64,000 nt of DNA from Isurus oxyrinchus (GCA_026770705.1 JANJGN010000007.1:97340001-97404000), one strand, 5' to 3'. Positions 22,601 through 47,369 are shown, counted from the stretch's first letter. The notes: generated by a model not told the origin, from the sequence alone. Translations and numbers: made by a program.

Positions 22601-25600
22601 AATACTTTCCCCCAGGACCCCCGCGTAGTCGCTCCCGAGGATGTCCCAGAATGCCCTGAACAACTCCACGGTGAGCCTCTCCAGCCCCGGGGATTGTCCC
22701 CTAGAGGCTGTCAAAAGTGCTGGTCAGCTCTGCCAGACTTATATGGGAGTCAAGCATTCCGGTGCCCTCCGGCCGACCTGCAGCAGGTTCTCCCACAAAA
22801 CTCTGTGAGCATCCTCGCTGGATGGATCCGGAGAGAAGAGGCCAGTATAGAAGGTTCTGGCAATAGCACTGACGCCCTCTGGATACGAGAAATGGGATCC
22901 GTCATCAACCAGCAGCGCAAGGAGCTGCTGACAGACCCTGTGCCTTTTTTCCAGCAAATAGCAGAAGGAGGAGCCATGGTCCAGGTCCTGGATAAACTGG
23001 ATCAGTGACCTCACGAATGTGCCATGAGGCCCGATGAGTTGCAGGTCCTGCAGATCACCATTCTTCTCATCGTACACTGACTGCAGGGCAGGGTACCCAT
23101 CGGGTTGATGGGGAAATGCCTCCATTTCGAGCACCTCCTTCTTCAATTCCTCGACCCTGGATTTCCACCTCTTTGACCACACCCTTGCGCACTCCTGACA
23201 GAAAACCTGGACGTGAGTATTGCCCAAGTCCAACCATAGACTCAGGAAGTGGAGGACACCGCAGTTCCTTCTCCAGACGGCCTTGAAACGACAAACCAAG
23301 TCCAGGAACCACTCGTCCTCGAGCAGCAGGTGGTTAAAGTGCTAGTGCGCAGATTCCGTCCGAGTGCAGAACGAACAGGGCTCTGCCCATACCAGATGGT
23401 TGTCTATGCATGGCACCCACCACACAGAAACTGAGGGAACGCAGGACACCTAGGCCCTTGAAACATAAAGGTGGTAGAGTTTGGATGCTACGACTCCAGG
23501 TAACACAATGGTGAAAATGTTGGAGTCAGGATGACATTTTGCCAGACATCCACCAAGTCAAAGGACCCGACCAGGACACACAACTTACTAACAACCTCGC
23601 TATGGTGCTGGGCACAGTGACAGTCCTGGGCTTCGAAGGTGCAGTTGAAATCCCGCTCGAGGACGAGTACTCACCCGCGTCAATGGAGCCAAGATCAGCG
23701 GGCACTTCCTCAAAGAAGCTCGCCTGCAGCTGCACGGCGAGGGGAGCAAACACATTCACAAAGTGAAGTGCCGCATCCCCCAGGTGCACACTAAGGTGCA
23801 GCAACCAGCCTGGCATTAGCTCCTTGATCCCCAAGAACTCCAGCTGAAAATGTGGGGCCAAAAGGATAGCCACCCCACCAGAATTGGAGGCAAGGTGACT
23901 AATGTAGACCTACTCTCCTCGCCTCCAGGAGCCAAGTGGCTTTGCTTCCTAGAATGGTTTGGGTTTGCCACAGGAAGCACAGAGCATACTTCATGTCCCA
24001 GAAGACCACAAAGTTCTGGAACCTGCACTGTGTGGCACTGCTGCGGATGTTGAGGCTGGCTATGATAGTCTTCATTCTCACAAGTATGTGCAACCATCAC
24101 CTGAGATAAAAGAAGGAGAGGACTTTTGTTAAGCCTTCCTCTCCTTCAGGAGCCCAGCGGGAAATGTATGTACCCTCCAGCGCATGTTCCTGTCCAATTT
24201 GGTGATCTTGTGTGCCTCACGAGTGGACCAGAACACCAGCAGAAAAGAATACCAGCAGTGCAGGGCCAAATGAACTCTGTCTCGGTGACCACAATGCTCG
24301 GTAAAATGTCCTGGAGCTCCCATACAGGGATGAGAGGAGAGTGAGCTGGGGGCACCAGATGATCCACCACCACACCCGATATCGACTCTAGGTCATCCCT
24401 GGTGCTCACCACTGAAACTCCGTCGTTCTCCAGGTTGTCGCCTCCAGCTTCCAAACCCTCCACCATATTGAGTACAGGGGCTGGTATACAGCTGCCAGTC
24501 AGCTCCAGCTCTACCTCGATTCCACCCACAGGATCAAAGCCAGAGGCGTCCTCTCTGGTCTCCACTATAGGTTTTGCGTCAGAGGGCAGTGGCATTTCGG
24601 AACCCGCTCCCCACCTGCACCGCACACCCCCCAACCACCCTGCCAAAGCCACTGGGTCATCCAGCAAGCTCAGGAGAAGCTCCTGACCTAAAACAAGGAT
24701 GCACAGTGCTAAAGGTTGGGAGGGCACAGGACGGCCTTCTTCACCACCACTACCCAATGACCCACTTGTAGAAATTAAAAATGGGGTGCCGTAGACCCCG
24801 ACGGGCCAGATAATATCTCGGGGTATTAAGTGGGTCTTTGAGTGGAACCTCCTCAAGGGAGGTACCCAGAGTGACCACCGAGGGGCCCTGCTCAGTGGAC
24901 TGCGGCAAGGTGTTGTGGGAAACAATAGGGACAGGGGAGTGGGGTTGCCCCAGATGGATGAGTGAGGATTTCAATTGTGGAGATGCCACCACCGATTCAC
25001 CAGGGGAGGGGAAACACCCAGCCTGTTCAGCCTGGATGTCCCCCTCATCCTCTTCCTCCTCCCAGGAGTGACATCTCTTCTGGAGTAGACTGGGGGCACC
25101 TCCATTTGTGAGGCCTCCTCCACCTCGTCAAGCCCTCCTGGATGCTCCACCCTCTGGGGTTTGGGCAAGTTCACACTTTTTAACAAGACCAACACCTTGG
25201 GGTCCCTTGTATCACCACCGCTGGCCCCGGGAACACACACAGAGACGACGCCGGGCCTAGCATATTGCACTTCAGCACACATGGCCTGGGAGGATGCACA
25301 GAGATGACACCGGGGCCGGATGTTTGAATTTCCCCCGAGGAGGTGTCTTCAAGGCGTTAGAGGTTCGAGGTGTTCTGGGGGCTTTGGGGAGTCTCGGGGG
25401 CTGCCCTCAAGTTGCGGGACTTCCTCTGCGTCCTCCTATGGCCCAGGACCTCTTCCCTCACCTCAATGGCAGCCGAGATGGTGGTGGCTATCAGCGACAC
25501 CTTCCATTCCTGGGAGGCAGATTGAGTGGTAGTGGAGGGAGGACCAGCGGTGCCAGCTGTGGCTGCTTGGATGGAGTTGGCATCTCTGGAGATGAGACAG

Positions 25601-27140
25601 TTTTTCTAAGGTACTCCACCTCCTTGAAAGCATGGAACCTCATGCCATCCGCTGTCGAAAAGACCCGGTAGGCAGAATCCTCAAAATCTATTGAAAAGAG
25701 CACCTCCATGCACTCCACTCGGGCCAATCATTTGAAAATCTGGCGCCAGAAGGAGGACACGTGGTGGAGGGCCGTGTCTTGCATGCCGAACAGGATCGTG
25801 CCTACCCCAGACCTGACGTCCTCCATTTGATGGAGGTGGGGAGCAGGGGCTCACTGGAGACAAAAGGTGGGACATTTCATATTTTGAGTCTCTGGGAGGT
25901 GGTCTCAAGGTGGTCCACCGCCAGAAAGGTCCTGTCCACAGTGAGCCCCTTTTGCAGGGCCAGGTGCACCATCTGCTCGGACCTCCAGAAAAGATGGCTT
26001 TGCCGCACATCTTTGAGGTGGCGACTGTGGCTGAGGATGCCGATGACCCCAGCCATAGCCCTTACACATGCCTCAATTGTCATCTCGGAATGGGTGTAGC
26101 CCTTCATCCCAAAAGCATTGGTGAAGATGCGGAAATGTGATGGGGCCCTGGGAGCAGCAGGGGCCACAGAAGCAGCTGCCCCTGGTAGGTTTCTCTGGGG
26201 GTCCCCACCATCGGTGATAGCACCATCTCCACACTTGCCCTGGAAGACCCGGCCACAGGTGACCCTGTTGTATTTGTCTTAGGGGCTGTGCCATACCCAC
26301 CCCAAGAAGTATTTGTAATAATATTAATAATTAATGGCTCTGTGCCACCCTGAGGGAGAAGTGGAGAAAGGTAGCTTAGCCTCCCCCTCTGAGATGTTAG
26401 TAGAGGAGTGCAGAGGAGGGAGAGGGGTAGAGGAGAGAGAGGCACAGGAGGAAAACGGGAAGGTATAGGTGGGTACCTTGATGGGAAATGAATGACAGGT
26501 GGGGGCCTTGATGATCTTCTGTCAGGGGGAGGGCGATGTCTTCACCATGCAGCCGGTACTGCCTGAAACACAGGACTAAGGCCTGCCCCTCTTTACCAGG
26601 CAGCACCAGCTGCCAGGCTCAGGCTGAGTGATATTCACTGATGGAAAAGGGGGGAGGGGTCGTGGCAAGATTTTACAGACAGACACAATCACCCTTTTTT
26701 CTCCTCCAAGTCTCTAGGGCTGTCTTCTGCCCTCCACCTACAAAACACAGCCCCCACTTGAACAAATATAATTCCAGACAACCACCTAGGATGTTTGAAA
26801 CACAGTCCTGGCCTCCTGGCCTCCCTTTCCAGTAGCAGCATTAAACACAGCAAACAGGAGCAGCAGCAGCTCTTCCTCACTCTCTCTCTCCTCCTTCCTC
26901 TGCAGGCCCCATAGAATGCCTTCCAGTCTCCAATTCCCCTGGCAATGGAAGGTAATGGTGATGATAACAAAACAGAAGGCTTCTTGAGGCAGGCAGAAGA
27001 ATTGGAATAATAAAGTAGTAGTATTCACTAGCAGGCAGGAGCACAAAGCCAGAGCACCCTACTCTCCTCAGTCTCTGGCTGCAACTGGAGCAACAACGAG
27101 CAGGACACGTGCCACAGGTGAGAGCAATCGAGGAGATGCA
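19620..27140 (-). mobile_element. Near full-length Tx1-clade LINE (ORF1 about 24100-26300; ORF2 APE-RT about 19860-24080), frameshifted
   Basis: APE IASLNIR; RT SLDQEKVFDGVDHKYL, GVHQGCPLSGLLY, SPGLERLTVELFRAFW; Tx1-type ORF1 MTIEACVRAMAGVIG. Confidence 0.88.
20100..20630 (+). mobile_element. CR1 3' end inserted in Tx1 ORF2
   Basis: CR1 3' UTR ending cctaatttctgctcctatgtcttatgctcttacggtct. Confidence 0.85.
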
Positions 27141-27799
27141 GATTTCTAAGCCTAGGCACGGGTGTTAATCACTTGTACTTAATGTTACCTATTGCAAATT
27201 AGCGCCCAAGAATGTCTCCTTGTCTATGGTTCCTTCTAATTGTGAGCGCTGTGAAACCTTGGATCTTGCATAAGGTAACGGCAGCTGTCTCCATCCAGGG
27301 CCTCTTCCCTGTACAGTGTGTAACCTTCAGACCAAAGTAATGATCTGGCTACACACTCACGGGAAAAATTACTGATGCTTGCGCCTCAGTGGTGCTTGTC
27401 ATTGCTGCCAGGTCGTCGTGAGCAGGCACCACAGAGTTCTCTTTGTTTTCTAAACACATTTGAGGTGGGGCTGCCCCTTCCCATCAATGCCTTCAGCATC
27501 TGTGACCTGTCACGGCGTGCTCCTGAAGCAGCCAGCTGCTGAAGGTTGAGAAAGGATCAGCTGCATTTAACGTTTCATGGCTGTGTCTCGACGATGTCAT
27601 CCTGACTGCATAGGGCAAGCGAGTTGCCCTCAGCTCGACAGGAATCAGACATTCCCAGAGGTAATGTGAAGGTCTATGGAGTGTTTTCACTGCATGTTGT
27701 CATCATCCTCCTGGCATCTAGCGGCTATTCAAGCTTTCTTAGCATATCCATGACATGAGCCTGAGCACGGAGGATTTGTGTGCTCCTGTCAGCCAGACA

Positions 27800-29080
27800 G
27801 GGGTCAAATGTTTACAGCAGCTAGGCGAGGATGTCAGGAATGTTATCCCTGCACCTTGTCATTGTCCTCCACGAACCTTGCGGTTACAAGGGGCTCACGA
27901 GCACGACTGCAACGTCTAGCCATAGTGATGGCGTCATCGCTGGCACCCTCAGCTTTGAGGACCTCATCACTATCATCCCCTTCGACATCCTCATCATTAG
28001 AGGATACTTGCAGCTCTTCCATCTCCTCCTCAGCAGTTCCTCTCCCGGTTGCCATGCCAGGTTGTGGCGAATGCAGCAGGTGACAGAGATGTCCAAACCC
28101 TCTGTGTGTTGTATAGTTCTCCACTGGACCTGAGGAGGCACCAGAACCTCGTTTTCAAAATGCTTATAGTTTGCTCCACTAATGTCCCTGTCATCGCAAG
28201 AGCCACATTGCACCCATGGCCAGCTACAGCCTGATGTTGCTGCATGAGTGTAATCAACCACATTCTCTTTATGCGGTCCTTCTTGCCAAAGAGGCAAGCC
28301 CATAGCCTCCCTGAGCCCTGGAAGATGCCACGGACCTGAGACATGCTAAGGATGTAGAAATTGTGAACACTCCCAGGGAACCACGTGCAGAACTGCAGGA
28401 TGTATTTGTGGTGGTCGTATACTAGCTGAACATTTTGGTAGATGTAGTTGACTGATTGTTGCCATGGAAAACTAAGCGGAAAATGAATGCTGTTGATGGA
28501 ATCCTGCAAGGCACCTCCGAGCAATGGCTCCCGGTGGATCTCAGCTGCTTATGTAACAGGCCCTGCCACCCCAGCATGTTCTGCCACACCTTCATCCTGA
28601 GGGAGGTGAGCTTCCCTTTCCTGAGCCAGGCACCTCCAACGCTCTTCTCCTTCTCTGGCCTCTGTAAGCCAAAAAGCACACCACTAAATCACCAATTTGC
28701 ATGATAATGACGTTCTCCTTCTACAGGATCAAAGAGAGATTCACTTGTGTTAGCATATGTGTCCTAAAAACCTATCACCCTTAAGTCTGAACGACCCTTC
28801 ACGCATGAATGAAAGTCCTGGTCACCACTTGGATGGCCAGTGTGCAGTGCACTTCATTGCTGCTGATATCCCACCCACCTTCACTCCAATCTACTTGACC
28901 GATTGTCAGCAGTATTGCCACCGGACTGCATGCAGTGCTGTCAGCTCAGGTGCAGGCATTCTCCTAGCCTGCACTGCAAGGTGGCGCTGATAGGTTGAAC
29001 CATAATGGTCACTGGTCCACCCCTTAATGAAGGCACTGTAAGAGCCTGTGAGTGCTTCGGTCAATGACTGTGCCATGGTC
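27800..29080 (-). pseudogene. Harbinger (HARBI1-like) DDE transposase remnant
   Basis: ILQFCTWFPGSVHNFYIL and LVEQTISILKTRFWCL match Harbinger transposase motifs; acidic C-terminus; frameshifts. Confidence 0.85.
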
Positions 29081-34290: not shown

Positions 34291-35513
34291 AAACGGACCC
34301 ACATATAATGGAGAAGCACCAGTCAGTAGCAGCACTAACAACCAGTCACCAATAACGGAGGTGCCCAAGCACAAGTAACGGAATTCAATCAACAGCAAAA
34401 AGGCCCAGTCACCATTATCGTTTGCCAGTCCTAAGCAGCATTATCTAGCAGAATCACCAGCAGCGGTATCTAACTTCCCCTGTTTCATAACTAGCAGCAT
34501 CCTGTCTCCAGCACAAACACACGGTCACCAGAAACATTTAACAGTCGGTGGGATACCATGATACAGATCACCATCAATGCACACCAGCAGAAGTGCCTTG
34601 TCAGCAGCAGCAACACAATCAACAGAATAAGTACCTCCTCGTAAGGCGAAAACCCAGATCATCAGCAACTTTCCGTTGACCAGCAGTTCGCCCAACAGGC
34701 ACACACAGGATCATCCAAAGATTAAGAACTTTATCGAGTCACCATCACTCAGTCAACGGCAGAAAAAATAGACCATCAACATGAAATCCCACTCAACAGT
34801 AGCATTATCTGTCACCGGTAACATTTAGCAGTCAACATAATGCTGTGATTAAAAACGTTAACCTGTCCTATGTTAGACATAAAGTAAAATCCCTTCCCGA
34901 AATGGATTATTGAGTGGTTACTGATCGTTGAGAACCGTTTCATTCAATTTGGAATTCTATCATTTCCATCAATCCGCTTGTATCTGGAGTGCCGATCTAC
35001 AATTTCAAAATAGCATGTCAGCTGAATGTCTGTCTATATGTCAGTTTCTGTGTAGTGGCCTTAATGCCAAAGGACCTTTTGCTCATGCAAACAACTAAGC
35101 TGTTGGTCCGCCTTGCGGCTGAGTTTCCATTGCATCGGCCCACCACTCTAAGACCGAGCGATACAGGGAAATGGGTCAATCGAGGCATACCGCTGTCAGC
35201 ACATCTGCAATAACGTGTCAGTAAAAACTGGCAAACTTTGCAATTATTGAGTAATTGCATTAATCCGGAAAATTTCACGTGATGCAGAAATGTTCCATGT
35301 TCTATTACACAACAGTGAGATGTGGGTGGCTTTAAATTCCACATTGCGTTCTCCGCTCTGACGTAAAAATGAAACCAGTACATTGTAGTTGTAGTTTCAG
35401 TTATGTCATACTGCAGTATATTGCAACACGCCCATTGCCAGATAATCTCCAAACAGTTCTATCCCCGCCAGTTCACAGTGCGAGTGATCAAGGTTTATCG
35501 GAATTTGCTCCGA

Positions 35514-35580
35514 ATGTCAGCATTGGATTTGCCGTCGTACCTTTCGGTCCTAGGCATTATTTATATAGGTTTATGCACAG
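35514..35580 (+). CDS. Exon 1, signal peptide MSALDLPSYLSVLGIIYIGLCT
   Basis: ATG followed by a hydrophobic stretch and a phase-1 donor cag|gtgacc, 176 bp upstream of the V exon acceptor. The donor is somewhat weak. Confidence 0.65.
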
Positions 35581-38500
35581 GTGACCTTTCTAATAAATAG
35601 ATAAGTGAACAACAACTGTGTAGAGGCCTCTTATGTTGAATGTTTATTATAAGATTTTCCATTTGATTTTGTTTTATTTCGTACTTATTATATCCGTATC
35701 TATAATAATGATCATCATTATCTCCGTCTGTAAACCATGCTCTTTTTTTATAACAGTGACTGACGGGTCCTCTCTATCAGTTCGCCAGCTCCCCATCCGT
35801 GTGACGGTGGTCAAATGTGTAAATGTGTCAATTTATTGCTCCATCCCACTTTTCGATCGCAACACATGGGTGGATGTTTATTGGCGGAGAGACAGCCAGA
35901 AGGGGATTTTGGATTTGATTGCAGACACAACGAAAATAATGACACCTTTCAGACAGGGATCTGCCGAACTCCGCCTGCTAAATGTGAATTTCCAGGACTC
36001 CGGAGTCTATTATTGCAGCGCCAGAGTGAGCGGGAGGATTTCCAATGGGAATGGAACGGAGTTAATTGTATACGGTGAGTGTCACTGAGCTGCTTTAACG
36101 GGTGTAAACTTATACAGCTGTATTTCAGAGCACATTTAATGAAAAGTCACTTTTCCCTCAGTTCAGTTAATCCTGTCTGTGAACGTACAGCTGTCGCGTA
36201 GAGCCAACATTGGAACTAAGAATATCTGACTTCGGACAATCATTGTTCTCAAATCCAGTCTCACTTATTCAAATAACTCAAATATGTTTAAATGTTTTCA
36301 AAGAATGCGGGCGTCTTTGGCACACCCAAGATTCATTGCATATTCGTACTTCTTCTTGATAATGTGGTTTGGTGTCGTTATCTCGAATCGCTGCATTTGG
36401 TATGGACAATGGTTTAACACCGTGCTCTGAGCTATGGTGAAATTGCCGCATTTTGTTATCCCGCAATGATGAAGGAACGGTGATATATGTTCTAGTCAGC
36501 ATTCCGTGCGTACTGGAGGGAATTTGGAAGTGTTGGTGTTCCCATGTGGTGTTCTGCCTTCACTTTCTATGTGATAATCTCACGGACTCGGGAGGTGGTG
36601 TCGAAGAATCTTTGGCGCGTATTGTAGTGCACCGCAAACACGATGCCCCTACAGTGAAATGAGTGAGCGTTTCAAGTGTTGGATAAAGTGCCTTCAATGG
36701 ATTTGTTTTACGGGATCGTATGGAGTATTGTTGCATCAATATACATCCAGACCGTAGTGAGAATTTCATCACACTCATGAGTTGTAGGTGGTGGGGACGC
36801 TTTGAGGAGAGAATACTTGAGCCACTCATTGTAGTACATAAAGCCTCTGACCTCTTCCAGTAACGATCGCATTTTAATGGTCATTTGTTTTGCATAATTA
36901 TAATTGGAAAATGTTGGGTGTGCAAACGTTAATCTACGTTAAAACAACTATGGCAAAAAGAAATAGACGCGCATCAATCTCTCAATGAAATCCTGTTTGA
37001 ATCATTGCATCCAATCCTCTTATCGCCGAAGAATTGAAATCCACTGTATTTACAAGTGCCCCAGAGTTTAATACCATTTCCAGATTACAAGGGAATGTAA
37101 TGTGTGAATTGATAGCAAGTGTATGTAAATGTTAAAAATAGAGGGAAGAGATACAGGGTAGTGTGGCATAAAATAAATCAAAGTTGTAAAAACAAAGCGC
37201 CGTTACAACGCCGGCATTAAACAGAAGCATGATTAAATGAATGGTCATAATTGCTGATACCAGGTTTTATATATATATATATATGCTGATAGGTTTGAAA
37301 GTAACAATGATGACATATTTGCTTGCATCACCTATTGCATTTGCACAACCAGGTTATTTTCACAATGTTAAGACATTACAGTTGCATTCACTGATTAGAT
37401 TTACATGGTCATGCATTGACCATTCTGCTTGCACGAATTGGAGATCAAACATGCAAATCATCTTCCGACTAGGCACCTTACAGCCTTCCGGACTGAATAT
37501 TGAATTCAACAACTTTAGGTCGTGAGCTCCCTCCCCCATCCCCACCCCATTTCTGATTCCCCCTTTCTTTTTTTTTTCCAATAAATTATATAGATTTTTC
37601 TTTTCCCACCTATTTCCATTATTTTTAAATATTTTAAAATCTTTTATGCTCTCCCCACCCCCATTAGAGCTATACCTTGAGTGCCCTACCATCCATTCTT
37701 AATTAGCACATTCGTTTAGATAATATCAACAACTTTAACTTTAACACCTATGTGTTCTATTGTACCATTGTCGTTGACATCTTTTGATGATCTGTTTCTA
37801 TCACTGCTTGTTTGTCCATACAACCACCTCTCTCTCTCTCTATCTCTCCGCCCCCCACACACACACCTTAAACCAGCTTATATTTCAACTTTTTCTTGGA
37901 CTCGAACTCAAGTTCTGTCGAAGGGTCATGAGGACTCGAAACGTCAACTCTTTTCTTCTCCGCCGATGCTTCCAGACCTGCTGAGTTTTTCCAGGTAATT
38001 CTGTTTTTGTTATGCACTTATGTTAATTTGTTGGATCAAATTACAGTAAGTTATATGATTGCAACTATGATTTCCATGATTAAATGCATAGTTGATGACT
38101 GAAAATGAGATTATTCAAGCACTGGAGGGGGAACATTTCAACAAAACACCATCAGTGATGATAAAATAATAAATCTCCCATGTCAAGTGGCCCGCCTGCG
38201 GGCTCAATCTGAGACTCTAGTAGGATAGCACCGGTAAAGGCGAAGTATCTCGATTCAGCTTCTGAAGGTCACGCAGGAGATTGATTCTGTTAATGTAATA
38301 ATTACTGAGATACTGTTTAACATGCAGTCGGGGGTAACGCTAGAAGTCGAATGGGATCACTGTCTGATAGCTGGAAAATTTCAGAGATTGAGTATGTTGT
38401 GAACTCAAAGGTAAAACATTCCTGATGAAGCAGGAAGTGGTTTTTAACGTTACCGTTTGTTTCAGCGAGCGCCGGCGAATGGAATGGGTTAGATCTGCGG

Positions 38501-41500
38501 ATAGGAGAATGGAGGCGAGTTTCTGAAAATAAAATACTGGATTATGAAAGAGGGTATTAACGATTAGAAGTGGACTAGTCGGTGTTACTCCAATAATTCG
38601 AGTTCAACTGTTACCTCGGCAGTCTGATTGAGTTTGGAGTGATCAAAAAAGAAATTCAAGGTTTTGCAAGCAGTGCGATGTCTCGGAGCCTTGCTACATG
38701 TGAAATTATTAATCAAACGAACATGGTAAGTTTAAGTAGAAAGCGAACAAACTGTCAGCGGGCCTGCAGGAGATGAAAACAGCACGCGCTGGAAACGCTT
38801 AGTACGCCTAACAGCAACTGTGCAAAGGGAAACAGAGTTAACGTTTCGAGTCGAATATGACTCTTCTTCGGAACGATAGAGTAGATTGGGTGTGCTGTGA
38901 GTTATGTGGTCAATTGCACAGGACCCTGAACCAAAACTCAAAGGTATGCACAAAATTCGACGGTTCAACAGAAATATAGTTTAACCCGCTTCATCAGTTA
39001 TTCAATAACACTGCTCAAGAAGCACCCCGATCCTGAATTGAGAAATTGCTGTGAACGTATTGTTGACATTCTATAGTTGTGTTGGCGATTGCTAAACCCG
39101 GTTTCCTTATGCCCTCCGACATGCGTCAAGCACCCAGTAACACTCCACCACGTTTATTCGGTGACAATGTAAGTGCTGACCTAGGTTTGTCTGGAAATTC
39201 AGCGCCAGTAACTTGAGGGAAGTGGAAGGAATTTGCTTTACCGAGACGGTGCTCTGCTGGTGATTTGCACCACGGTGTGTGTGCTTATCATTAAGGAAAA
39301 TAATGACGTTGATCTATAGATTAATTTCGCGAAATATTATGGTTCAGAGAGGCATCGCACTCTACATTTGGCTGTCTAAAGCCATTGACTCGGCCGCAGT
39401 TGTAGCAGTGCCTATGAATATGGGGTATAATGAGGCAAAACAGAAGTTACAGGGTGCATTTACTTATTGAAATTTGGTTTAAATACTGTAGATCAATCAT
39501 GATTAAAGGTAATCCAAAAAGAAGGGTTTTCAGGGCGTTATCATTGGTGACAAAGGTCCGTTAATTTAGATTTGCTGGATAAACTGGGGGGGGGTGGTGG
39601 TGTTAGAAGACAAGAAGACAATTTTTACTCAAAGATGAATGATACCATGGCATAATTAAGCCAAGGCATGCTGGAGGATATCACATTGGGTGGGGTGGTT
39701 GTGGGATCAGTGTTGAATGAGATAAACACTTCAGGAGAAATATTAACTAATGTTGAAAATGGCACTTTAGCGGAATGGGGTAGAGAGCTTACAGTCCAGC
39801 TGTCAAGGCGCCTTTCTGTCTTAAACATCTGAAAATTAACGGTAAAGTAAATATGGATGTACTTAGAGCACCGAGACAATTAGTTCAACGAATCATAGCG
39901 AATCAGTGATGCGTTACCACATAGAGATTCGTAATGTCTCAACAAAGCTTGAACCAGAACCTCGGGGAATTGGATTACCCCTATGGAATGCTGGACACGT
40001 ATTTGCATAAGTGCGCAATACTAGGATACCGGCTTTTTAATATTCTGTGGCCTAGTTATCTTGTTATTTATGATAACTGAATTGCAATGAAGGCTTGACT
40101 TTATTCACACTGAGCACTAACTGGGATCAAAGCTTAGATAAACTCTCGCAAATGCATCAATCACGTTAGCATTGCTTTCGCCAAGTTCGCCCTGGACTGA
40201 AATAGCAACGGATTGTGTTCGATGCTAACAATAATGATAATAATATAAGCTGTGAAGATGAATTACATCAAGTCATGTCACCGTCTAGGAAGTTTGAAAC
40301 CCATATGAATTGACGGCCAATAACTGTTGGTCTTGTCAATGACATCTAAACCCCATAAGTGAGGGAAAACAACAGCAAAAAGAAACAACACCACAGTGAA
40401 ACACCCGCATGGAATTTTAAGCCATCGGACGGACTGATTCTGCTAAACGGGGTCCGAAATTGGATTCAATCCGCTGAAGTGGGGTCTCACCTCAACCAAT
40501 GTTGGATGAGGACAAATGAAAGGAACATTGTGATGTACTTCTTCATGCAATAAAATCTCTATTGCAATGAAGATTTCCTACTACAGGAATACTCCAGTGC
40601 GAACTGATTTCCTTTTCCATTTACATTTGATAGCTTTGCAAACCTGTCCTGATGAGTTCAAGACGAAAGGTTTCATCGAAAAGCATATCTTTTTTCAGCA
40701 GTGCTCAATATATAATTTTGTTCATTTTCTAATGGAATGTGCAAGTAGCGATTTGATCGATTTCCTTTAAATCCTTTTTCAGTGCCACCAACACCGGTGA
40801 AGATTACTCGCGTTTCCTCTACCTTCCTCAAAATCCTCTGCACAACAGCTGGCTTCTTCCCGAAGGAAATTAACCTCACGTGGTACAAAAATGACATCGA
40901 AATTACAACTGGGATGAAAATCACGGAAATACAGAACAAGGGGGGATTATATCATGTTTCCAGCTTTCTCAATCTCCCGGAGGCCGGATCGGTTTATACC
41001 TGCCAAGTTTCACACATCTCCCTCGAGTCCCCAGCCAATGACAGTTATACGGTTCGTAGTCAGGGTAAGAGATTCAGATTAGCAATACCCTCGTGAAATG
41101 CAGCTGTGTTTAACGTCCCGCGGAAAACTTTATATCCCCACTAATGTGCACCAACGGATTTTAATAGTGTGATTATGAAGGACGTTGATGCGCTTCTTAC
41201 ACTGTATTTTCTTTTCGCGAGGTATTAAACAAAATATCACTATGTAAATTTCAGCTGCGTCTGATTAGAATAAAGACCGTGGTTTGAATAGCAAATTGGT
41301 TTCATCTTCATAGAAAGAGGGTAGTCATTGATCGTAGTGACCCTGTATGCAGGACGGCTACTAATTGGTCCCTTTGGCCAAAGCGATAAGACTCATTGCA
41401 TTTCACGATTACCACTGATGTTCTGGATGGAGCCGTTGGTAATATCTCTGATGGTGCACAAATATTTTCTGAGACACATCGAAAATGATTATGATTTGAT

Positions 41501-44500
41501 TTAGATGCGATCAGGGCATGGGTTTGCATCTGGCAGATTATATTAGCGTACATATTGCAGAGGAATATTCGTGAGTAGGTTTATTGCCAAGTTGTATATA
41601 GTGTGCTGGGATCTGAGATAAAATAAGTCAAAAGAGAAAGTGATCTGAGCGCAATTGCGTATGGAAATTTAAATGTCTACAATCACTGTCAAGTGGTTGG
41701 AGCCAAAATTCAAGCATTGGTTTCTCTAACAGGGCCAAATCAAGAAAAGATTTATCAAATGTCCCTATCTTTTGTCCATCCTCATCTATCAGATCATGGC
41801 CTGTTCAGGATCATTTTTTTAAAATTCCCCTTTGTGTTTTCTGTTGAAAGTGATCATTTCCACATCAGAACCTTCCTCAGCCTCTAAGATCCCATTTTAA
41901 CTTCCAGCTTTTAAGCTGATGCTCTCTTTCTCTTTCCTTTCTTATTTCCCCCAGTGCTAACTGTAGCCAGTTCAAGGTGACTCAAAAGTCATAAGTATTG
42001 GGGCACTGGGTGAAAACATTCCAAAGAGCATTCGTAGGTTGGTATCTGGTTATGCTCATTTCTAGCTTAGAATGGCATAAACCTGAGGCGGGTGAGGGCA
42101 GAGGAAGCTAATTTTAATTGCATAATGACTGGCTGGACTGTGTACACGGAGATAGAGGACACATTTAAATGAATGAATGGGGCATGTCATATCCAGACAG
42201 GGTTGTTTTAGCTTGCATTATATAAGCCTTCTGCCAAAAGGCTCGGGCAGTAAGTGCATATTAGCTGCAAGTGCTTTAAAAGACCTGGGCTAGTTTCTAT
42301 AATCGGTCTATAACCAAGAATTATTGAGAACAAAAGGAAGCTATTTGGTCCATCGTGCATATGGAAACTCGTTTAAAAAGTTATGTATTTAGCCCTACTC
42401 ACCCAGTCTTCGCGTTGCCTCTTAAGAATTAGCCCTCCAAGTATTGATACAATGCCCTTTGAACGTTATTAGTCACTTTGCTTTCAGGCAGTACATTTCG
42501 GATCACAGGATCACAGCGTGGAATAATAATTTTCCACATGTCCTCTCTGCATGGCTGCCATCACTTCTGAGCCGTGTCCTCACCTTACCGACCCAGCTCC
42601 AATAAAACTGTTAATTAATTAAAGCACCTCTATAAATTAGATTGTTCATCATCTTTAATTCATGAAAAACATCTTACCTCCACTGGTCTCTCCAAAATTA
42701 AAATCCTATATCAGAGTTATCATCTGAGTAACATGTTCTACACTCCCTCTAACCCCCAACATCCTTCTGTAAACGCAATGCACAGACTTCGAATCCATAT
42801 TCCACATAAGAGCTAACGAGTGTTTGAAAAACATTAGACATAACTCCCTTTGCTTCAAACCCGTTTACTCTATTAGCAAAGCCACTGATCCCACGCTTTT
42901 ACAGTTTTCTGAACCTGTCCTACCGCTATGAAACAATTGATTATATCTACCACACCACTCTGATCGAGAGCACCATATAGGTTATATAACATACTTCATA
43001 CTGCCTCTTCACATTCTTGTCACCAAAATGCACCATTTCACATTTCTTCATTAAACTTCATTTTCTACGTGCCTACCTAATTTAACAATCGTCCTATGCA
43101 TGCCTGGAATCTGTTAATCGCTCCCTCACTGTTTGCTAATTTTCTGTTTAAGCTTATCTGCAAGTTTGATATTATACACAAGGTTGTGTCATTAACATGT
43201 GAAAAACATAGAGCTGTTCCTAATATCAACCATTTTGTAACACCAGTGCATGCCACTCTCAGTTTACCGATCGTTAGCAAAATGTATATCCAATGTGGCA
43301 CCTTCTCTTTAATCTCCCGGGTGTGAACTGTGCGAAGGTTACTTTAAGGAGCCCTACTGACGGTAACAACATATCAAATCAACTACACGATCTTCATTGA
43401 CCGTCTCAATTATTATAACGAATAATCCAGCAAGCTAACCGAACCCTATTTGCCTTTAACAGTTCTTGCTCACCTTCATTTATCTGCCCATGCTTTTCTC
43501 ATAAATGTCAACTAATTTTGTCCTGGAGCATTGTATTTAAAAAGGTTCGGCTGAGATAAGGCTGTCTTGCCTGCAGTCATTAACAGTACCCTTCATCTCA
43601 TTTATTTAAACAGAGGCGCAATACTTGCATTCATCGAAGCCCCTGATGTGACTCCAAAATCCAATGTTGTGATTAGGGACAGATCTGAAACTCAGCAGTT
43701 ACCTCAGAATAATGGGCTTGTACACAAAAGGCAAATGGAGCCCTAAACGGCAGATGGGATCTTGCCTGATATACCAGATGGTCAACATCATCGAATTGAA
43801 GTCAAATATCATTGCCTTAGGATAATGTTCTTTGTTTTAATTTCTGGAATTGGCACAGTATTTTTATTTGAATGCGTTTGGGTGTTTGCTGGTACAATGA
43901 TACAGAGAGAGAGGGAAGTACATATACATGGTAAAATCCACACGCATATAATCAGGGACACAGGATGAGCAAAGCTATATAATTATTCTTTAGGATTTGG
44001 GAATTATTCAAAATGAAAGTTGCTGATTGTCACACACAGATAGTTCATTTCTGAATTACCATTGATGCACGTTAGTAGAATAATGCTTCTCCAATAAAAT
44101 GTCAGGATGAAAGAAACCATTAAGATTCCTTCGTAGCTCCTTCAGGGAGGATAGATGCAAGGTGTTGGGTTGCCTGTGATGTTGACGTTGTTTCATATTT
44201 CGACACTTTTTTCTCTGTACAATGCGAAGGTGGTTATCCCTACACCTTGGTAACTGGATGTGCAGTCGGCGGGTTAATAATCCTTGTGCTGGCAATTCTC
44301 GTCATATGTTGGAGATTGGCCACGACTGAAGGTAAGTTCTGACACGATCTTAGTTCAGAGTTATCGTCTAATTGTTGTTTAACGTTTCAATAGCGGGAAA
44401 CTTCAAATGTCCAGGCTGGGATTGAGGTTTCCAGAGCACTCCCGATTGCATGGAGAGCAATTGCCCTTCCAGGCACAGTGTTGTGATGAGGGAGGGCGTA

Positions 44501-46256
44501 AAACGCAACACACCCACCAGAATAATTAAACACATTTCGATATTAAATCGAACGGTATTTCTGTTCTTTATGGGAACTAAACGTTCTACATTAAATATGA
44601 CTAAGGTTGGAGCAGAAGGAGGGTGCAACCTTCTGGTAAAAATCTTGAAGTATGTCATGCACTTAAGCAAGCTGTACAGTGGGCCCTAAAGCGTAATTCC
44701 ATTTGACGCTGGACTCATAATACCGAGGTCCAGAATAATTATTTTGAGACCTGGGTTCGAATTCCACCGCCAAAGATGGTGAAATTTGAATTAAGTAAAA
44801 ACCTGGAATTAAAAGCTCTGATGATAACCATGTAATCATTGTCGATTTAAAAAACGATCTTGTTCACTAATGTCATTTCTGGAAGGAAATCTGCCACCCT
44901 TGCCTGGCCTGACCCACACGTGACTCCAGACCCTCAGCAATGTGATTACCTCTTAAATGCCCCCTGAACAAGGGCAATGCCCATATTTCATGAACGCATA
45001 ACAAAGGACCCAGCAGCAAAACGGGTTGCGATTTTGGACTGAGGGCGCGTCTCGCCCCTTTGCTCAAATTTTGGGTAACTTTTGGCGGACTTGTCGCTCA
45101 TGTACTTCACGCTGACTTGCATTGTTCATGTATATTTCAAATAGGCACAGAGATTACAGAGAACATACCGAACCAGCTTGAGGAGCAGGTCAGTTTTACA
45201 CTGATGATACATTGAAATGCACTGAACGTCTACAGCATAGAGATAGCAATACTCCTGCGGCCTCAGAAAAGCTTCGACTTACGATGGAACAAGGGGCGAA
45301 CACTGCCAATCTCTGTTTCTTTTTCTCCCTGTCTTCTGCACCTGTGACATTGCGGTGAATGACTAATCAGGGCTACAGCGTTACTCATTTCACGCAATCC
45401 TCCTGTTCTCGCAGTAACCTGTGTTGATGTTTGCACCCTTTCAATATTAGTTGGACAGCTATCAAATGCGTGAAATATCCTACTCTAGCTCTAACCTGTT
45501 GCCATCGCCACTCCTGCCTTTAACGTTGTATGCGGACCCTCTGTGTTTTAACCAGGGCTGGCGCCTTGAGCGGAAACATCCAATCTGTGCGAAAAGCCAC
45601 TCAGGCCAAATGCATTTTCTGAAATTTGCATAGTCAAATTTTAGACATGCGTTAACAGGTCAGTAACACCACGAGTCATATATTGGCAATTATTGCATAC
45701 ATTGCAAGTATTTGGCCTAACAACATGGATAGCGCCTAAAGGGCTTCCACTAGCAATCAGTTCTACTTATATAAGTATTCTTAGATAGATAATGCTACTT
45801 AAAGCTCCGACCTACGCTAACCTACACTAAAAATGGTTACATCCTTATAAGGCATCTGTGGTATGTTTGTGGTTCTGTACCATGTTTATGTAATTTGATA
45901 TGCATCTAGTATTTCTCCAAAATCTCTCTTCAGGTTGTTCATGGAGAAGTGATGGGTAGTCCGCCTTATGCTGCTCTCAACCACAGCGAGCACGGAAATG
46001 CCTTGAAATCCAGATGTGTGGAAGGGGGCCCCATCCGTGTACAGGTACTTACGGAAATCATAACGCTCCATCCCAAGCATTAGCGTTCACTTTCTTGTCT
46101 CCAATGTCAGCAATGTGCATTCAGAATCTGGAACCAGTAGTTTGCGTAGAAGGTGCCACTGATCTTTCATTGTTGTTTTCACAGGCCATGCAAGATACAG
46201 GAGTTAAACTGACTTACGCGTCTCTAGATTTCTCCGCTTCCCAGAAAAGTGCATAA
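35514..46256 (+). CDS. Six-exon VJ-C1-TM-ITIM immunoglobulin-superfamily receptor (SIRP/NKp30-like), 294 aa; join(35514..35580,35757..36074,40783..41064,44230..44331,45145..45188,46185..46256)
   Basis: All introns are GT-AG with phases 1,1,1,1,0. Exon lengths 67+318+282+102+44+72=885 nt give one open frame, with domains in the expected order for a type I membrane receptor. Confidence 0.85.
35757..36074 (+). CDS. Exon 2, V-set Ig domain with J-like G strand
   Basis: Acceptor tcttttttttataacag-type tract ending at 35756; motifs VRQLP, SIYC, VYWRR, AELRL, DSGVYYC, GNGTELIV; phase-1 donor g|gtgagt. Confidence 0.95.
37425..38010 (+). mobile_element. Penelope-like 3' fragment in intron 2, with hammerhead-like motif at 37911-37949
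   Basis: IFRLGTLQPSGLNIEFNNFRS* followed by a terminal repeat nearly identical to the hairpin arms. Confidence 0.9.
38770..38875 (-). mobile_element. Short Penelope-related fragment with hammerhead-like motif
   Basis: Reverse complement reads gttCCGAAGAagagtcatattcgactcGAAAcgttaac. Confidence 0.6.
40783..41064 (+). CDS. Exon 3, C1-set Ig domain
   Basis: Acceptor tcctttttcag; C1 motifs ILCTTAGFFPKEINLTWYKN, GLYHVSSFL, YTCQVSHISL; phase-1 donor g|gtaaga. Confidence 0.95.
42320..43670 (-). mobile_element. Old CR1 3' half in intron 3
   Basis: Degenerate CR1 3' end and RT-like sequence. Confidence 0.65.
44230..44331 (+). CDS. Exon 4, transmembrane segment GGYPYTLVTGCAVGGLIILVLAILVICWRLATTE
   Basis: Not in the ORF track. 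It starts at the first AG after a polypyrimidine tract, has about 22 uncharged residues followed by WR, and ends at a consensus phase-1 donor g|gtaagt. Confidence 0.88.
44690..45000 (+). mobile_element. tRNA-derived SINE (resembles shark DeuSINE/SacSINE1 type) in intron 4
   Basis: B-box gggttcgaattcc at about 44753 and core gttcactaatgtc..ggaaggaaatctgcc..gtgactccagaccc. A related fragment lies at 54415-54530 (-). Confidence 0.7.
45145..45188 (+). CDS. Exon 5, short cytoplasmic exon GTEITENIPNQLEEQ
   Basis: tttcaaatag acceptor and cag|gtcagt donor. Its 44 nt convert phase 1 to phase 0, exactly as required to join the TM exon to the ITIM exon. Confidence 0.75.
46185..46256 (+). CDS. Exon 6, ITIM-bearing terminal exon AMQDTGVKLTYASLDFSASQKSA*
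   Basis: Strong acceptor ttgttgttttcacag, phase 0. LTYASL (46209-46226) matches the ITIM consensus (I/V/L/S)xYxx(L/V). Confidence 0.88.
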   Translation, partial: AMQDTGVKLTYASLDFSASQKSA

Positions 46257-47369
46257 AGGGAACAGAAGAAAATTGGGGCTGAGTATGCAGGGATCAAGAT
46301 AAACAAGCCAAACGGAGAATCTTTTGTTGTATGAGCAGTATCAATGTCCGGTGATGTTGCAATTACACCGGCCCTGCCATAATGGTGTCTGAATGCTGCA
46401 ATTAACAGTGTGTTGTTCATTGATCGTAAACGCATTGCCATGTATTGGACTTTGGATAAGCAGCATGAGATTTACAGACAGAAAGACACGGGTCACTGGA
46501 CATGTGCATATTGTTGAAATCTGAAATCCCTGTAAGATAAAATAATCAAAGAAGCACCTGTCAGTAAGATATAATAATTGTCCTAATATTACTGGAATTT
46601 ATCGTAAAATCGTGTAATAGCAGGATGTGCCTATTTGTGTGATTTAATGGAATTCGAGGCAGCTAGTCTGGTGCTTTGATGCAAAAAGCGAAGCTAACTT
46701 TGAAATGTTAATGAGGTAAACATGGAGAAGTTTGAAAACATAGATATCAAGGGGAAGGAACATTTACATTTTTAAATAAGCCAGAGTAGGTTGTTTTCAA
46801 AGGATGGGAGAAATGTTTCACCCAGCTAGGTGAAGTTTAGAAACAGTGTGTTTATTTTTCCCTAAGCTATGACAGGTGTTTTTTTATTATCAGGGTGATA
46901 AAGTCCAAGGACAAAGTGAAACGATTCGTATTTGCATTCAAAATGGAAGATGTCTATAAATGAGAGAAAACTGCTTACAAATGAAGACATTTTGAAGATC
47001 TTGCATGTATGAAAAAGTATTCAGCATCTTTGCCTTAAGCTGCTGTTTCCAGGTCTGAAGTGAAGGGAACTCACTTTGAATTCGACTTGCTCAGCATACC
47101 ATGCTTCTTTGCCTTGACATTTTAAAAACTATGTCTCTTATTGTCACCTTAACGAAAGTATAACTGGGAACTAGATTGATTAGGAGAATTTAGAATTTAT
47201 CATAGTAGTAATTTTTAGATCTATGATTGTATTTTACTTAATTATCTTACTAATATATGTTTAATTTACTTGTATCAAAAATATATATGACTTGGTGGTC
47301 TTATTACTACTGAATTCAATGTTCACCTTTCGAAATTTATGTGAACTGCAAAGCAAATTGTGGCAGTTC

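What the first reader, a model, noticed from the sequence alone, without database searches (positions are those of the whole stretch)
35514..46256. Intact germline-joined VJ-C1 inhibitory receptor with the ectodomain layout of a TCR/Ig light chain
Seen: six phase-matched exons encoding leader, V with a J-like GNGTELIV strand in the same exon, one C1 domain, an uncharged TM and an ITIM. Three of the exons are hidden from or only partly covered by the ORF track. Known: C1 domains are largely confined to Ig/TCR, MHC, b2m, tapasin and SIRP-type molecules; NKp30 is VJ without C1 and mammalian SIRPs are VJ-C1-C1. An uninterrupted VJ-C1 gene is the type proposed as the RAG-transposon target that gave rise to antigen receptors. 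Inference: a possibly uncharacterised lineage-specific inhibitory receptor family resembling a proto-antigen receptor.
Basis: partly seen in the sequence, partly recalled or inferred. Interest (0 to 1): 0.85.

Follow-up and report, generated by a model that had tools for sequence, protein, structure and literature searches.

The report
Shark V-C1 inhibitory immune receptor gene
This is a real, spliced shark gene for a surface receptor with an antibody-like tip, one constant-type domain and an inhibitory tail; it is one more copy of a large gene family of sharks, rays and chimaeras that databases list under stray automatic names and that I found in no paper.

Summary
On the + strand, 35514-46256, lies an intact gene. 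It encodes a split leader, a V domain with an in-exon J-like strand (GNGTELIV), one C1-set domain, an uncharged membrane helix and a tail with the ITIM LTYASL. All introns are GT..AG.

A contig from a public run (type recorded only as a guess at RNA) joins the VJ exon to the C1 exon at exactly the predicted bases.

Corrections:
- There are seven coding exons, not six. A 111-nt exon at 45934-46044 was missed.
- This copy stops at a TAA 25 codons before the family's usual stop.

The gene is not unique. It falls in a well-supported elasmobranch subfamily of a multigene family, found in at least 16 cartilaginous-fish species including a chimaera. Automatic names include SIRP-alpha-like, tapasin-related-like, B7-H6-like and Ig-lambda-like. 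No bony-vertebrate orthologue turned up.

By sequence profile and predicted fold it sits about equally far from Ig/TCR chains, UrIg2, SIRP and B7-H6. It is therefore not shown to be a special antigen-receptor ancestor, and the published UrIg/UrIg2 genes are better candidates.

The scan already reported two paralogues, one 45 kb downstream, with the same reading.

Best reading: a non-rearranging inhibitory receptor that signals through SHP phosphatases (inferred). Its ligand is unknown.

The parts
35514..35580 (+). Exon 1: start codon and first part of the split leader (22 codons plus 1 base, donor GT)
   Evidence: Sequence read; splice sites. The Cetorhinus orthologue P0001, residues 1-22, maps here at 95% identity.
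35757..36074 (+). Exon 2: end of the leader plus the V domain with the J-like G strand in the same exon (phase 1 to 1)
   Evidence: Pfam V-set 37.1 bits. 90% identical to P0001. The X4 contig begins to fit at 35756, and the X2 contig leaves at 36073/4.
35816..35818 (+). Cys codon (KCV) at a position that is Gly in 90% or more of family members
   Evidence: Alignment A1, near-invariant G39; translation. The X4 contig covers it without a difference. Cetorhinus has Arg here.
36047..36070 (+). J-like motif GNGTELIV (G-x-G bulge of the G strand)
   Evidence: Translation. The G-x-G is near-invariant in the family. In the model of orthologue P0001 the G strand is broken at exactly G120-N121-G122.
40783..41064 (+). 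Exon 3: C1-set Ig domain (phase 1 to 1)
   Evidence: Pfam C1-set 55.6 bits. PDB sequence hits are to Ig C, UrIg2 and MHC II beta-2 domains. 97% identical to P0017. The splice joint from 36074 is seen in RNA.
44230..44331 (+). Exon 4: short stalk, uncharged transmembrane helix and start of the tail (phase 1 to 1)
   Evidence: Hydrophobic scan; sequence. P0017 maps here. No charged residue lies in the helix.
45145..45188 (+). Exon 5: 44-nt cytoplasmic exon (phase 1 to 0)
   Evidence: Sequence; identical to P0017 residues TEITENIPNQLEEQ.
45934..46044 (+). It carries PPYAAL, a YxxL that is not a canonical ITIM.
   Evidence: AG/GT and frame. Present in P0017. It aligns with the first tyrosine motif of the family (LSYAAL in P0151).
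46185..46256 (+). Exon 7, coding part: ITIM LTYASL (46209-46226) and TAA stop (46254-46256)
   Evidence: The motif is conserved across the subfamily.
46257..46334 (+). In-frame relic of the ancestral C-terminus, cut off by the TAA. It holds AEYAGI (46278-46295) and the family's usual stop at 46332-46334.
   Evidence: Translation. P0017 has Lys in place of the TAA and reads on. Orthologues end at this second stop.

Best explanation
The locus is an intact, transcribed, non-rearranging immune-receptor gene of a lamnid-type shark. It encodes a type I membrane protein of 331 residues.

Protein layout:
- a signal peptide;
- one VJ-type V domain;
- one C1-set domain;
- a very short stalk;
- an uncharged helix;
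- a tail with one canonical ITIM (LTYASL) and an upstream YxxL.

Family: it belongs to one elasmobranch-wide subfamily of a multigene family restricted, as far as seen, to cartilaginous fishes.

Likely mechanism (inferred, not shown):
- The V domain binds a still unknown cell-surface or pathogen ligand.
- Src-family kinases phosphorylate the tail tyrosines.
- SHP-1/SHP-2-type phosphatases dock and damp activation of the leukocyte that carries the receptor.
- Family members without tyrosine motifs, and predicted isoforms without the C1 exon, would act as non-signalling or differently spaced partners, as in other paired-receptor families that evolve by gene birth and death.

This copy has a shortened tail. 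It lost the last tyrosine motif to a TAA, and the lamnid lineage also lost the second motif.
For: Shown:
- Exon map, phases and GT..AG sites.
- V-set and C1-set scores above Pfam cut-offs.
- V-to-C1 splice joint at the predicted bases in a contig, and contig ends at the V acceptor and the C1 donor.
- Near-identical RefSeq model P0017 (Carcharodon) with the same exons.
- Confident two-domain model of the 90% identical orthologue, pLDDT 83, with a G-strand bulge at G-N-G.
- The family occurs in sharks, rays and a chimaera, with a sharp score gap to everything else. Family proteins score 205 bits or more against the profile; the next hit scores 84 bits and is a tail-only match.
- The window copy sits in a starred clade in both the V tree and the C1 tree (96 and 99 SH-aLRT). 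That clade holds five shark orders and Mobula.
- Conserved tail motifs across the subfamily.

Inferred:
- ITIM function, from the established (S/I/V/L)xYxx(I/V/L) consensus and its role in SHP recruitment.
Against: - There is no protein, ligand or signalling data.
- RNA support is a handful of low-depth contigs from runs whose type is only guessed, and the tissue is unknown.
- The four downstream junctions rest on homology alone.
- This copy keeps only one canonical ITIM, whereas tandem SH2 phosphatases usually prefer two.
- It has Cys at a near-invariant Gly and an early stop. It could therefore be a weakened allele.
- The family's ITIM-less members lack a charged membrane residue (P0046, P0127, P0110), so a classic activating partner is not evident.
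Confidence: 0.72

Rival explanations
1. It is simply the cartilaginous-fish orthologue of SIRP-alpha (SHPS-1), with one C1 domain fewer, and works like it, binding a CD47-like 'self' marker.
For: - NCBI names many members 'tyrosine-protein phosphatase non-receptor type substrate 1-like'.
- With the family profile, SIRP-alpha (2wng) is the best PDB hit that is neither an Ig chain nor UrIg2: rank 7, 103.8 bits, with one stretch across V and C1. SIRP-gamma scores 92.9 bits.
- Full family tails carry four spaced tyrosine motifs (LSYAAL, TVYAQT, LTYASL, VEYSEI). This resembles the four-tyrosine SIRP-alpha tail (resemblance from memory).
Against: - There is one C1 domain, not two, and no second C1 exon in the introns.
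- Neither the V-only profile nor the C1 exon brings a SIRP into the best 60 PDB hits.
- The same kind of ITIM plus TxYxxI tail also occurs in Siglecs and other receptors. The 84-bit tail-only hit to a fish MAG/Siglec shows this, so the tail is weak evidence of kinship.
- No bony-vertebrate SIRP appeared among the sequence hits that I could name.
- Synteny could not be tested.
Confidence: 0.15
2. It is a B7-H6/butyrophilin-type ligand (V-C ectodomain) rather than a receptor, read by NKp30-type receptors of other cells.
For: - The best whole-ectodomain structural matches include B7-H6 (4zso_E, Z 16.0, 190 residues aligned, 26% identity), B7-H3, PD-L2 and butyrophilins.
- Some members are auto-named 'NCR3 ligand 1-like' or 'CD276 homolog'.
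Against: - The Z values of B7, nectin, Neph and NCAM types are tied within 1, and depend on a predicted, flexible domain angle.
- The V domain has a conserved G-x-G J motif, the mark of a VJ-type V domain; whether B7 V domains have it was not tested here.
- The conserved multi-ITIM tail points to a signalling receptor.
- Foldseek's local matches favour light chains and TCR beta.
Confidence: 0.07
3. This particular copy is a decaying allele or young pseudogene within a tandem array that gains and loses genes.
For: - The TAA lies 25 codons before the conserved stop, with the lost motif still readable behind it.
- There is a Cys at a near-invariant Gly.
- The second tyrosine motif is lost (RVQ where others have VYAQ).
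Against: - The frame is open through all seven exons, all splice sites are intact, and the gene is transcribed and spliced.
- The key ITIM is kept.
- The Gly is also replaced (by Arg) in the Cetorhinus orthologue, and the second motif is also missing in Carcharodon. Those two changes are therefore older lineage traits, not fresh damage.
Confidence: 0.1
4. One reading: the family is a surviving relative of the very gene that the RAG transposon split, specifically allied to Ig/TCR.
For: - It has an uninterrupted VJ exon followed by a C1 exon, and a split leader.
- The top PDB hit of the family profile is UrIg2, at 126 bits.
- The best single-domain V hits are shark V-NAR, V-lambda and TCR V.
- The nearest named Atlas cluster is 'putative antigen receptor'.
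Against: - The UrIg2 score is the sum of three C1 matches. Its V-C1 stretch scores 59 bits, no better than a lambda chain at 65 bits.
- The C1 domain is closest to MHC II beta-2 domains.
- No linkage to the MHC or to antigen-receptor loci is seen (unchecked notes).
- The homodimer test gave no answer.
- UrIg and UrIg2 have the synteny that this family lacks (PMC12227049).
Confidence: 0.08

Closest known systems
SIRP family (SIRP-alpha/SHPS-1, beta, gamma)
   Same: - A non-rearranging VJ-type V domain is followed by C1-set domain(s).
- It is a single-pass membrane protein.
- The tail has spaced tyrosine motifs that recruit SHP phosphatases in SIRP-alpha.
- SIRP-alpha is the highest-ranked PDB hit of the family profile that is neither an Ig chain nor UrIg2.
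   Different: - There is one C1 domain instead of two.
- Neither domain alone shows a specific sequence tie.
- No bony-vertebrate orthologue was found.
- The family is large and diverse in each species.
- CD47 binding and synteny are untested.
UrIg and UrIg2 of elasmobranchs (PMC12227049; UrIg2 structure 9dmx)
   Same: - Both are non-rearranging, with the VJ in one exon, a split leader and C1-type domains.
- Both are found in sharks and rays.
- UrIg2 is the top PDB hit of the family profile.
   Different: - UrIg2 has 9-11 C domains, and both have several, against one here.
- The paper reports no ITIM in them.
- They are single genes linked to the MHC or to the antigen-receptor complex.
- They are reported from elasmobranchs and no other vertebrates, whereas this family is multigene and also present in the chimaera Callorhinchus.
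NKp30 / shark NCR3 family
   Same: - Both have a non-rearranging VJ-type V domain.
- The J motif G-N-G-T-x-L-x-V resembles that of human NKp30 (from memory).
- Predicted isoforms of the family that skip the C1 exon would be V-only, like NKp30 (P0002, P0005, P0011).
   Different: - NKp30 has no C1 domain. From memory, it is an activating receptor with a charged membrane residue and is MHC-linked.
- Here there is a C1 domain, an uncharged helix and an ITIM, on a piece of the genome without MHC notes.
- NKp30 ranks only 50th by structure, Z 13.5.
- The paper on shark NCR3 genes (Kinlein et al. 2021, cited from memory) did not turn up in the library, so overlap with its eight subtypes could not be excluded.
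PRARP genes (Fu et al. 2019, cited in PMC10751288)
   Same: - Both are non-rearranging VJ genes (PMC10751288). That PRARPs carry an inhibitory motif is recalled from memory.
- The nearest non-chondrichthyan V hit here is a coelacanth V-TM-ITIM protein (P0080, 31% identity). It may be of that kind.
   Different: - PRARPs are described from bony vertebrates, in chicken with a single V domain (from memory).
B7-H6 and butyrophilin-type V-C molecules
   Same: - The ectodomain has the same V plus C layout with a similar extended shape. B7-H6 gives Z 16.0 at 26% identity.
- Several family members carry automatic names that point to these molecules (NCR3 ligand 1-like, CD276 homolog, butyrophilin-like).
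   Different: - This family has the G-x-G J motif and a multi-ITIM tail.
- The structural scores are tied with nectin, Neph and NCAM types.

Membership tests
Unnamed chondrichthyan VJ-C1 receptor family (auto-named SIRP-alpha-like, tapasin-related-like and so on) | V and C1 domains each score far above all other proteins against family profiles | tested here: met
   Family V domains score 85 bits or more, against 63 or less for all others. The window V is 90% identical to P0001 and the C1 97% identical to P0017. The window sits in starred clades in both domain trees.
Unnamed chondrichthyan VJ-C1 receptor family (auto-named SIRP-alpha-like, tapasin-related-like and so on) | Exon layout leader / VJ / C1 / TM / short tail exons, with the motifs NG-x-G-T/S-x-L-x-V, VPPTP and Y-x-C-x-V-x-H | tested here: met
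   All are present in the window gene.
SIRP family | Ectodomain V-C1-C1 | tested here: not met
   There is a single C1 exon. No further Ig exon was found in the window with 208 family and related proteins.
SIRP family | V and C1 group with SIRPs rather than with other IgSF | tested here: inconclusive
   SIRP-alpha ranks 7th with the whole-protein profile. No SIRP is in the best 60 for V alone or C1 alone. No reference sequences were on hand for a tree.
SIRP family | Location in the SIRP neighbourhood; CD47 binding | not testable with these tools
The window holds only transposon remnants beside the gene.
UrIg / UrIg2 | VJ followed by several C1-type domains (three or more) | tested here: not met
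   There is one C1 exon. Domain counts for UrIg2 come from PMC12227049.
UrIg / UrIg2 | Linkage to the MHC or to the Ig/TCR gene complex | tested here: inconclusive
   All MHC notes for this genome lie on other pieces. These are unchecked notes, and no direct map was made.
NKp30 (NCR3) | V-only ectodomain, charged membrane residue, no ITIM | tested here: not met
   A C1 exon is spliced to the V exon in RNA. The helix is uncharged. An ITIM is present.
Rearranging Ig light chain / TCR chain | Separate V and J segments flanked by recombination signals | tested here: not met
   V and J are contiguous in one open exon, with no heptamer inside it.
B7 / butyrophilin family | V-C ectodomain whose domains group with B7 members | tested here: inconclusive
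   Structural Z is 16.0 to B7-H6, tied with unrelated V-C pairs. No sequence test was possible.
PRARP | Orthology to the chicken PRARP genes | not testable with these tools
   No sequences or paper are held. The only lead is the coelacanth hit P0080.

The most novel reading that the evidence does not exclude
The family is an old, independent branch of membrane-bound VJ-C1 receptors that predates the split of chimaeras from sharks and rays. It would be the cartilaginous-fish survivor of the stock from which the V-only inhibitory VJ receptors of bony vertebrates (PRARP-type, NKp30-type) and the SIRPs descend. That would make it a living example of what a pre-RAG, signalling 'one-chain proto-receptor' looked like. 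Its optional C1 exon would show how V-only forms arose.
Probability: 0.12. Interest if true: 0.8.

Novelty: new variant of a known kind. Interest (0 to 1): 0.45.

Why it matters
Non-rearranging genes that keep V, J and a C1 domain together are rare. They are the raw material for ideas on how antibodies and T-cell receptors began.

Cartilaginous fishes turn out to hold not just the two published single genes (UrIg and UrIg2) but a whole, diversified family of such genes with inhibitory tails. I found no paper on this family. It offers:
- a new set of candidate innate receptors of shark leukocytes;
- a natural series for asking how VJ-C1, V-only and V-C1-C1 receptors relate;
- outgroups for V and C1 phylogenies.

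This single copy adds little beyond that. It is one more member, with a shortened tail.

Tried and rejected
- Paralogues in the window: none found with the gene's own exons or with 208 related proteins.
- Neighbouring genes for synteny: only a Harbinger-type DDE remnant and a reverse-transcriptase ORF were found.
Chromosome position and neighbours in other species could therefore not be read.
- Rfam: no match in the window.
- Homodimer prediction of the orthologue's ectodomain (P0001 residues 24-222, two copies): score 0.11, 'no answer'. This is not evidence either way.
- Word-indexed protein searches with a full-length member and with the family profile reached no SIRP, NKp30 or B7-H6. This reflects the word filter, not distance.
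- Papers: the 'PRARP' search returned only unrelated acronyms. The UrIg 2023, Ohta 2019 and Flajnik 2012 papers are not held, and a token I recalled from the shark NCR3 paper (Kinlein 2021) matched no held paper.
- The joined, spliced protein of the window was never built or searched.
- Species: the window differs from the Carcharodon RefSeq protein at about 10 of 250 residues and at two stop positions. I did not settle whether it is another lamnid species, a divergent allele or a very young paralogue.

Full report
**What is in the sequence**

The window has no N runs. On the + strand I read a gene of seven coding exons:

| Exon | Coordinates | Content |
|---|---|---|
| 1 | 35514-35580 | leader, part 1 |
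| 2 | 35757-36074 | rest of leader plus V domain ending in SNGNGTELIVY |
| 3 | 40783-41064 | C1 domain |
| 4 | 44230-44331 | short stalk, uncharged helix, start of tail |
| 5 | 45145-45188 | cytoplasmic |
| 6 | 45934-46044 | cytoplasmic, PPYAAL |
| 7 | 46185-46256 | LTYASL, then TAA |

- Every intron begins GT and ends AG.
- The phases are 1, 1, 1, 1, 0, 0.
- The sum is 996 nt, or 331 codons plus the stop.
- Pfam scores exon 2 as V-set (37.1 bits, cut-off 26) and exon 3 as C1-set (55.6 bits, cut-off 21).
- No recombination-signal heptamer lies inside the V exon. V and J are germline-joined.
It missed exon 6. That exon is symmetrical and is skipped in one predicted Heterodontus isoform (P0152), so the six-exon form is a plausible isoform.

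**Is it expressed?**

Public runs were found with 35450-41100. Four of them, kept as contigs and only guessed to be RNA, were laid on that stretch.
- One contig of X2 fits 35985-36073 and then skips 4708 bases, with GT..AG ends, to 40783. This is the predicted VJ-to-C1 junction.
- A 506-nt contig of X1 fits 40801-41066 and then runs on for 240 nt that are not in the stretch. This is as expected for a splice from 41064 to exon 4, whose first two bases are also GT.
- A contig of X4 fits 35756-35873 without a mismatch and has 36 further letters upstream. This is as expected for the leader junction.
- Depths are low (2.5-5.5).
They rest on the RefSeq model P0017, which maps exon by exon onto the window.

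**What it belongs to**

An exhaustive HMMER search with the V exon returned these best matches:

| Protein | Species (source name) | Identity |
|---|---|---|
| P0001 | Cetorhinus maximus | 90% |
| P0017 | Carcharodon carcharias, 'tyrosine-protein phosphatase non-receptor type substrate 1-like' | 98% over the part it holds; 97% in C1 |

Dozens more proteins follow at 30-70% identity.
- Names and species show sharks of five orders, rays (Mobula, Hemitrygon, Narcine) and the chimaera Callorhinchus.
- The automatic names vary widely: SIRP-alpha-like, tapasin-related-like, NCR3-ligand-1-like, Ig-lambda-like, CD276 homolog and MHC-like.
- Several species have many members on one chromosome-sized record.
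- Against profiles built from the family, family V domains score 85-145 bits and all other proteins 63 or less.
- With the whole-protein profile there is a drop from 205 bits to 84 bits. The 84-bit hit is a tail-only match to a fish Siglec-type protein.
- The next-best V domains belong to a coelacanth V-TM-ITIM protein, to multi-V ITIM receptors of lizards, snakes and turtles, and to a frog and a fish 'SIRP-like' protein.
- I saw no bony-vertebrate protein with both family domains.

In quick maximum-likelihood trees the window copy sits with Cetorhinus and Carcharodon.
- This group lies inside a clade of 17 rows in the V tree (SH-aLRT 96) and 19 rows in the C1 tree (SH-aLRT 99).
- The clade also holds Scyliorhinus, Heterodontus, Heptranchias, Hemiscyllium, Chiloscyllium and Mobula.
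- At least five other clades hold the remaining members. Carcharodon alone has three subfamilies.
- The family therefore diversified before sharks and rays parted.

**How it compares with known kinds**

C1 exon alone against PDB sequences:
- The hits are Ig constant domains, UrIg2 and MHC class II beta chains.
- The best single-domain scores go to MHC II beta-2 domains (45-50 bits).

Family profile (A1) against PDB sequences:

| Hit | Bits | Remark |
|---|---|---|
| UrIg2 (9dmx) | 126 | sum of three C1 matches; its V-C1 stretch gives 59 |
| Lambda chain part of 2rcj_C | 65 (V-C stretch) | comparable two-domain stretch |
| SIRP-alpha (2wng) | 103.8 | rank 7 |
| SIRP-gamma | 92.9 | |

V-only profile (A2) against PDB sequences:
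- The best single-domain hits are a shark V-NAR (55.9 bits), a V-lambda (53.9) and TCR V domains (about 50).
- Neither SIRP nor NKp30 is in the best 60.

Predicted structure:
- AlphaFold2 on the Cetorhinus orthologue with 64 family sequences gave a confident model. Mean pLDDT is 83, and most blocks of ten residues across the two domains are above 90.
- The G strand is interrupted exactly at G-N-G, the bulge typical of VJ domains.
- Whole-ectodomain structural matches are tied among extended V-C pairs: Rst, B7-H6 (Z 16.0, 26% identity), Neph1, PD-L2, B7-H3, butyrophilins and nectins.
- The C1 domain alone fits HLA-DP/DQ membrane-proximal domains at 1.3-1.6 Å.
- The V domain alone fits NCAM d1, IgNAR V, CD79b and TCR V. 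NKp30 gives Z 13.5.
- Foldseek lists Fab light chains and TCR beta chains at E about 1e-15, but with rmsd above 9 Å. The local features agree and the domain angle does not.
- The language-model atlas gave only generic V-set and C1-set neighbours.

In sum, the family has the layout of a light chain or TCR chain but no measurable special kinship to them. It is about equally far from SIRP, UrIg2, B7-H6 and Ig/TCR.

**The tail**

Full-length subfamily members carry four spaced tyrosine motifs. In Heterodontus P0151 these are LSYAAL, TVYAQT, LTYASL and VEYSEI.
- In the lamnids the second motif is gone: RVQ stands where others have VYAQ.
- In the window the first motif is PPYAAL, which is not canonical. 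The third is the canonical ITIM LTYASL.
- The fourth motif (AEYAGI, 46278-46295) lies behind a TAA at 46254-46256.
- The reading frame continues intact to a second stop at 46332-46334, the position where the orthologues end.
- Carcharodon P0017 has Lys at the first stop and Leu at the second.

The window copy also has Cys where 90% of members have Gly (35816-35818). Cetorhinus has Arg there, and the Cys codon is present in the X4 contig. These points make a weakened allele possible, but the gene is otherwise intact and spliced.

**Mechanism**

- Shown: gene structure, splicing of V to C1, domain types and family conservation.
- Inferred from the established role of ITIMs: phosphorylation of LTYASL (and perhaps PPYAAL) recruits SHP-type phosphatases and damps the cell.
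- Unknown: the ligand, the expressing cell and the oligomeric state. The homodimer test gave no answer.
- The window copy's helix is uncharged, and three ITIM-less family members show no charged membrane residue either (P0046, P0127, P0110). A classic activating partner through DAP12-type adaptors is therefore not evident.

**Literature**

- Non-rearranging VJ-C1 genes are an active topic. UrIg and UrIg2 are proposed as relatives of the gene that the RAG transposon invaded (PMC12227049).
- PMC10751288 lists NKp30, PRARP and several tetrapod VJ-C1 genes as possible remnants.
- Neither paper mentions SIRP-like or ITIM-bearing VJ-C1 genes of sharks.
- My searches found no paper on this family.
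- Key subscription papers could not be read: the shark NCR3 family paper, Ohta 2019, Fu 2019 and the UrIg 2023 paper. Prior description cannot be excluded.

**Earlier notes of this scan (unchecked AI notes)**

- Two paralogues were already followed up with the same conclusion: s1-864164, 44.8 kb beyond this window and described as part of a tandem array, and s1-865376 on another piece.
- Note s1-870896 flagged the TAA. I confirmed it against P0017 and the orthologues.
- All MHC notes, and a note on NKp30-type VJ receptors in the MHC (s1-868612), lie on other pieces. That speaks against MHC linkage and against identity with the MHC-linked NCR3 genes. I did not check those notes.

**Limits**

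- No reference sequences of SIRP, NKp30, PRARP or B7-H6 could be brought in for a tree.
- The spliced protein of the window was not joined or searched.

**Verdict**

This is one more member of a large cartilaginous-fish family of non-rearranging VJ-C1 inhibitory receptors, on which I found no paper. It is a new variant of a known kind, of moderate interest as a family and low interest as a single copy.

Noticed in passing
window 37340-38095 (intron 2), also about 12350-12420 and 62760-62880: A repeat inside the long intron draws enormous contig depth in all four runs (up to about 5.7e5) with many variants and rearranged joints. Short translated pieces of it recur at about 12.3 kb and 62.8 kb of the window. 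It is probably a very abundant, transcribed interspersed element. It has no Rfam match.
   Followed up: partly
window 40938, 40982, 40990 (C1 exon): RNA contigs of runs X1 and X2 read G, A and T where the window has A, G and C. Two of these give the residues of the Carcharodon RefSeq protein P0017 (Lys to Glu, Ser to Leu). The window is therefore a divergent allele, a sister species or a very young paralogue of that gene.
   Followed up: partly
window 46332-46334: The window keeps the family's usual stop codon here, whereas the Carcharodon RefSeq protein reads Leu and runs on for 16 more residues. The two sequences thus differ at two stop positions within 80 bases.
   Followed up: partly
window 28030-28524 (-), within the GC-richer block 20000-28000: An ORF with a weak DDE_Tnp_4 (Harbinger-type transposase) match, 24.1 bits against a cut-off of 24.8. 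The block 20-28 kb has 52-56% GC against about 41% elsewhere.
   Followed up: no
window 61096-61965 (+): A 289-codon ORF with a reverse-transcriptase (RVT_1) match, 37.6 bits. It is a retroelement remnant downstream of the gene.
   Followed up: no
proteins P0002, P0005, P0011 (Scyliorhinus, Heterodontus, Mobula): Predicted isoforms of family genes join the VJ exon straight to the membrane exon, skipping the symmetrical C1 exon. This gives V-only, NKp30- or PRARP-like receptors from the same gene.
   Followed up: no
protein P0075 (species not looked up): A family member with the C1 exon duplicated in tandem (V-C1-C1, the two C1 copies nearly identical). It shows how a SIRP-like three-domain layout can arise within the family.
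   Followed up: no
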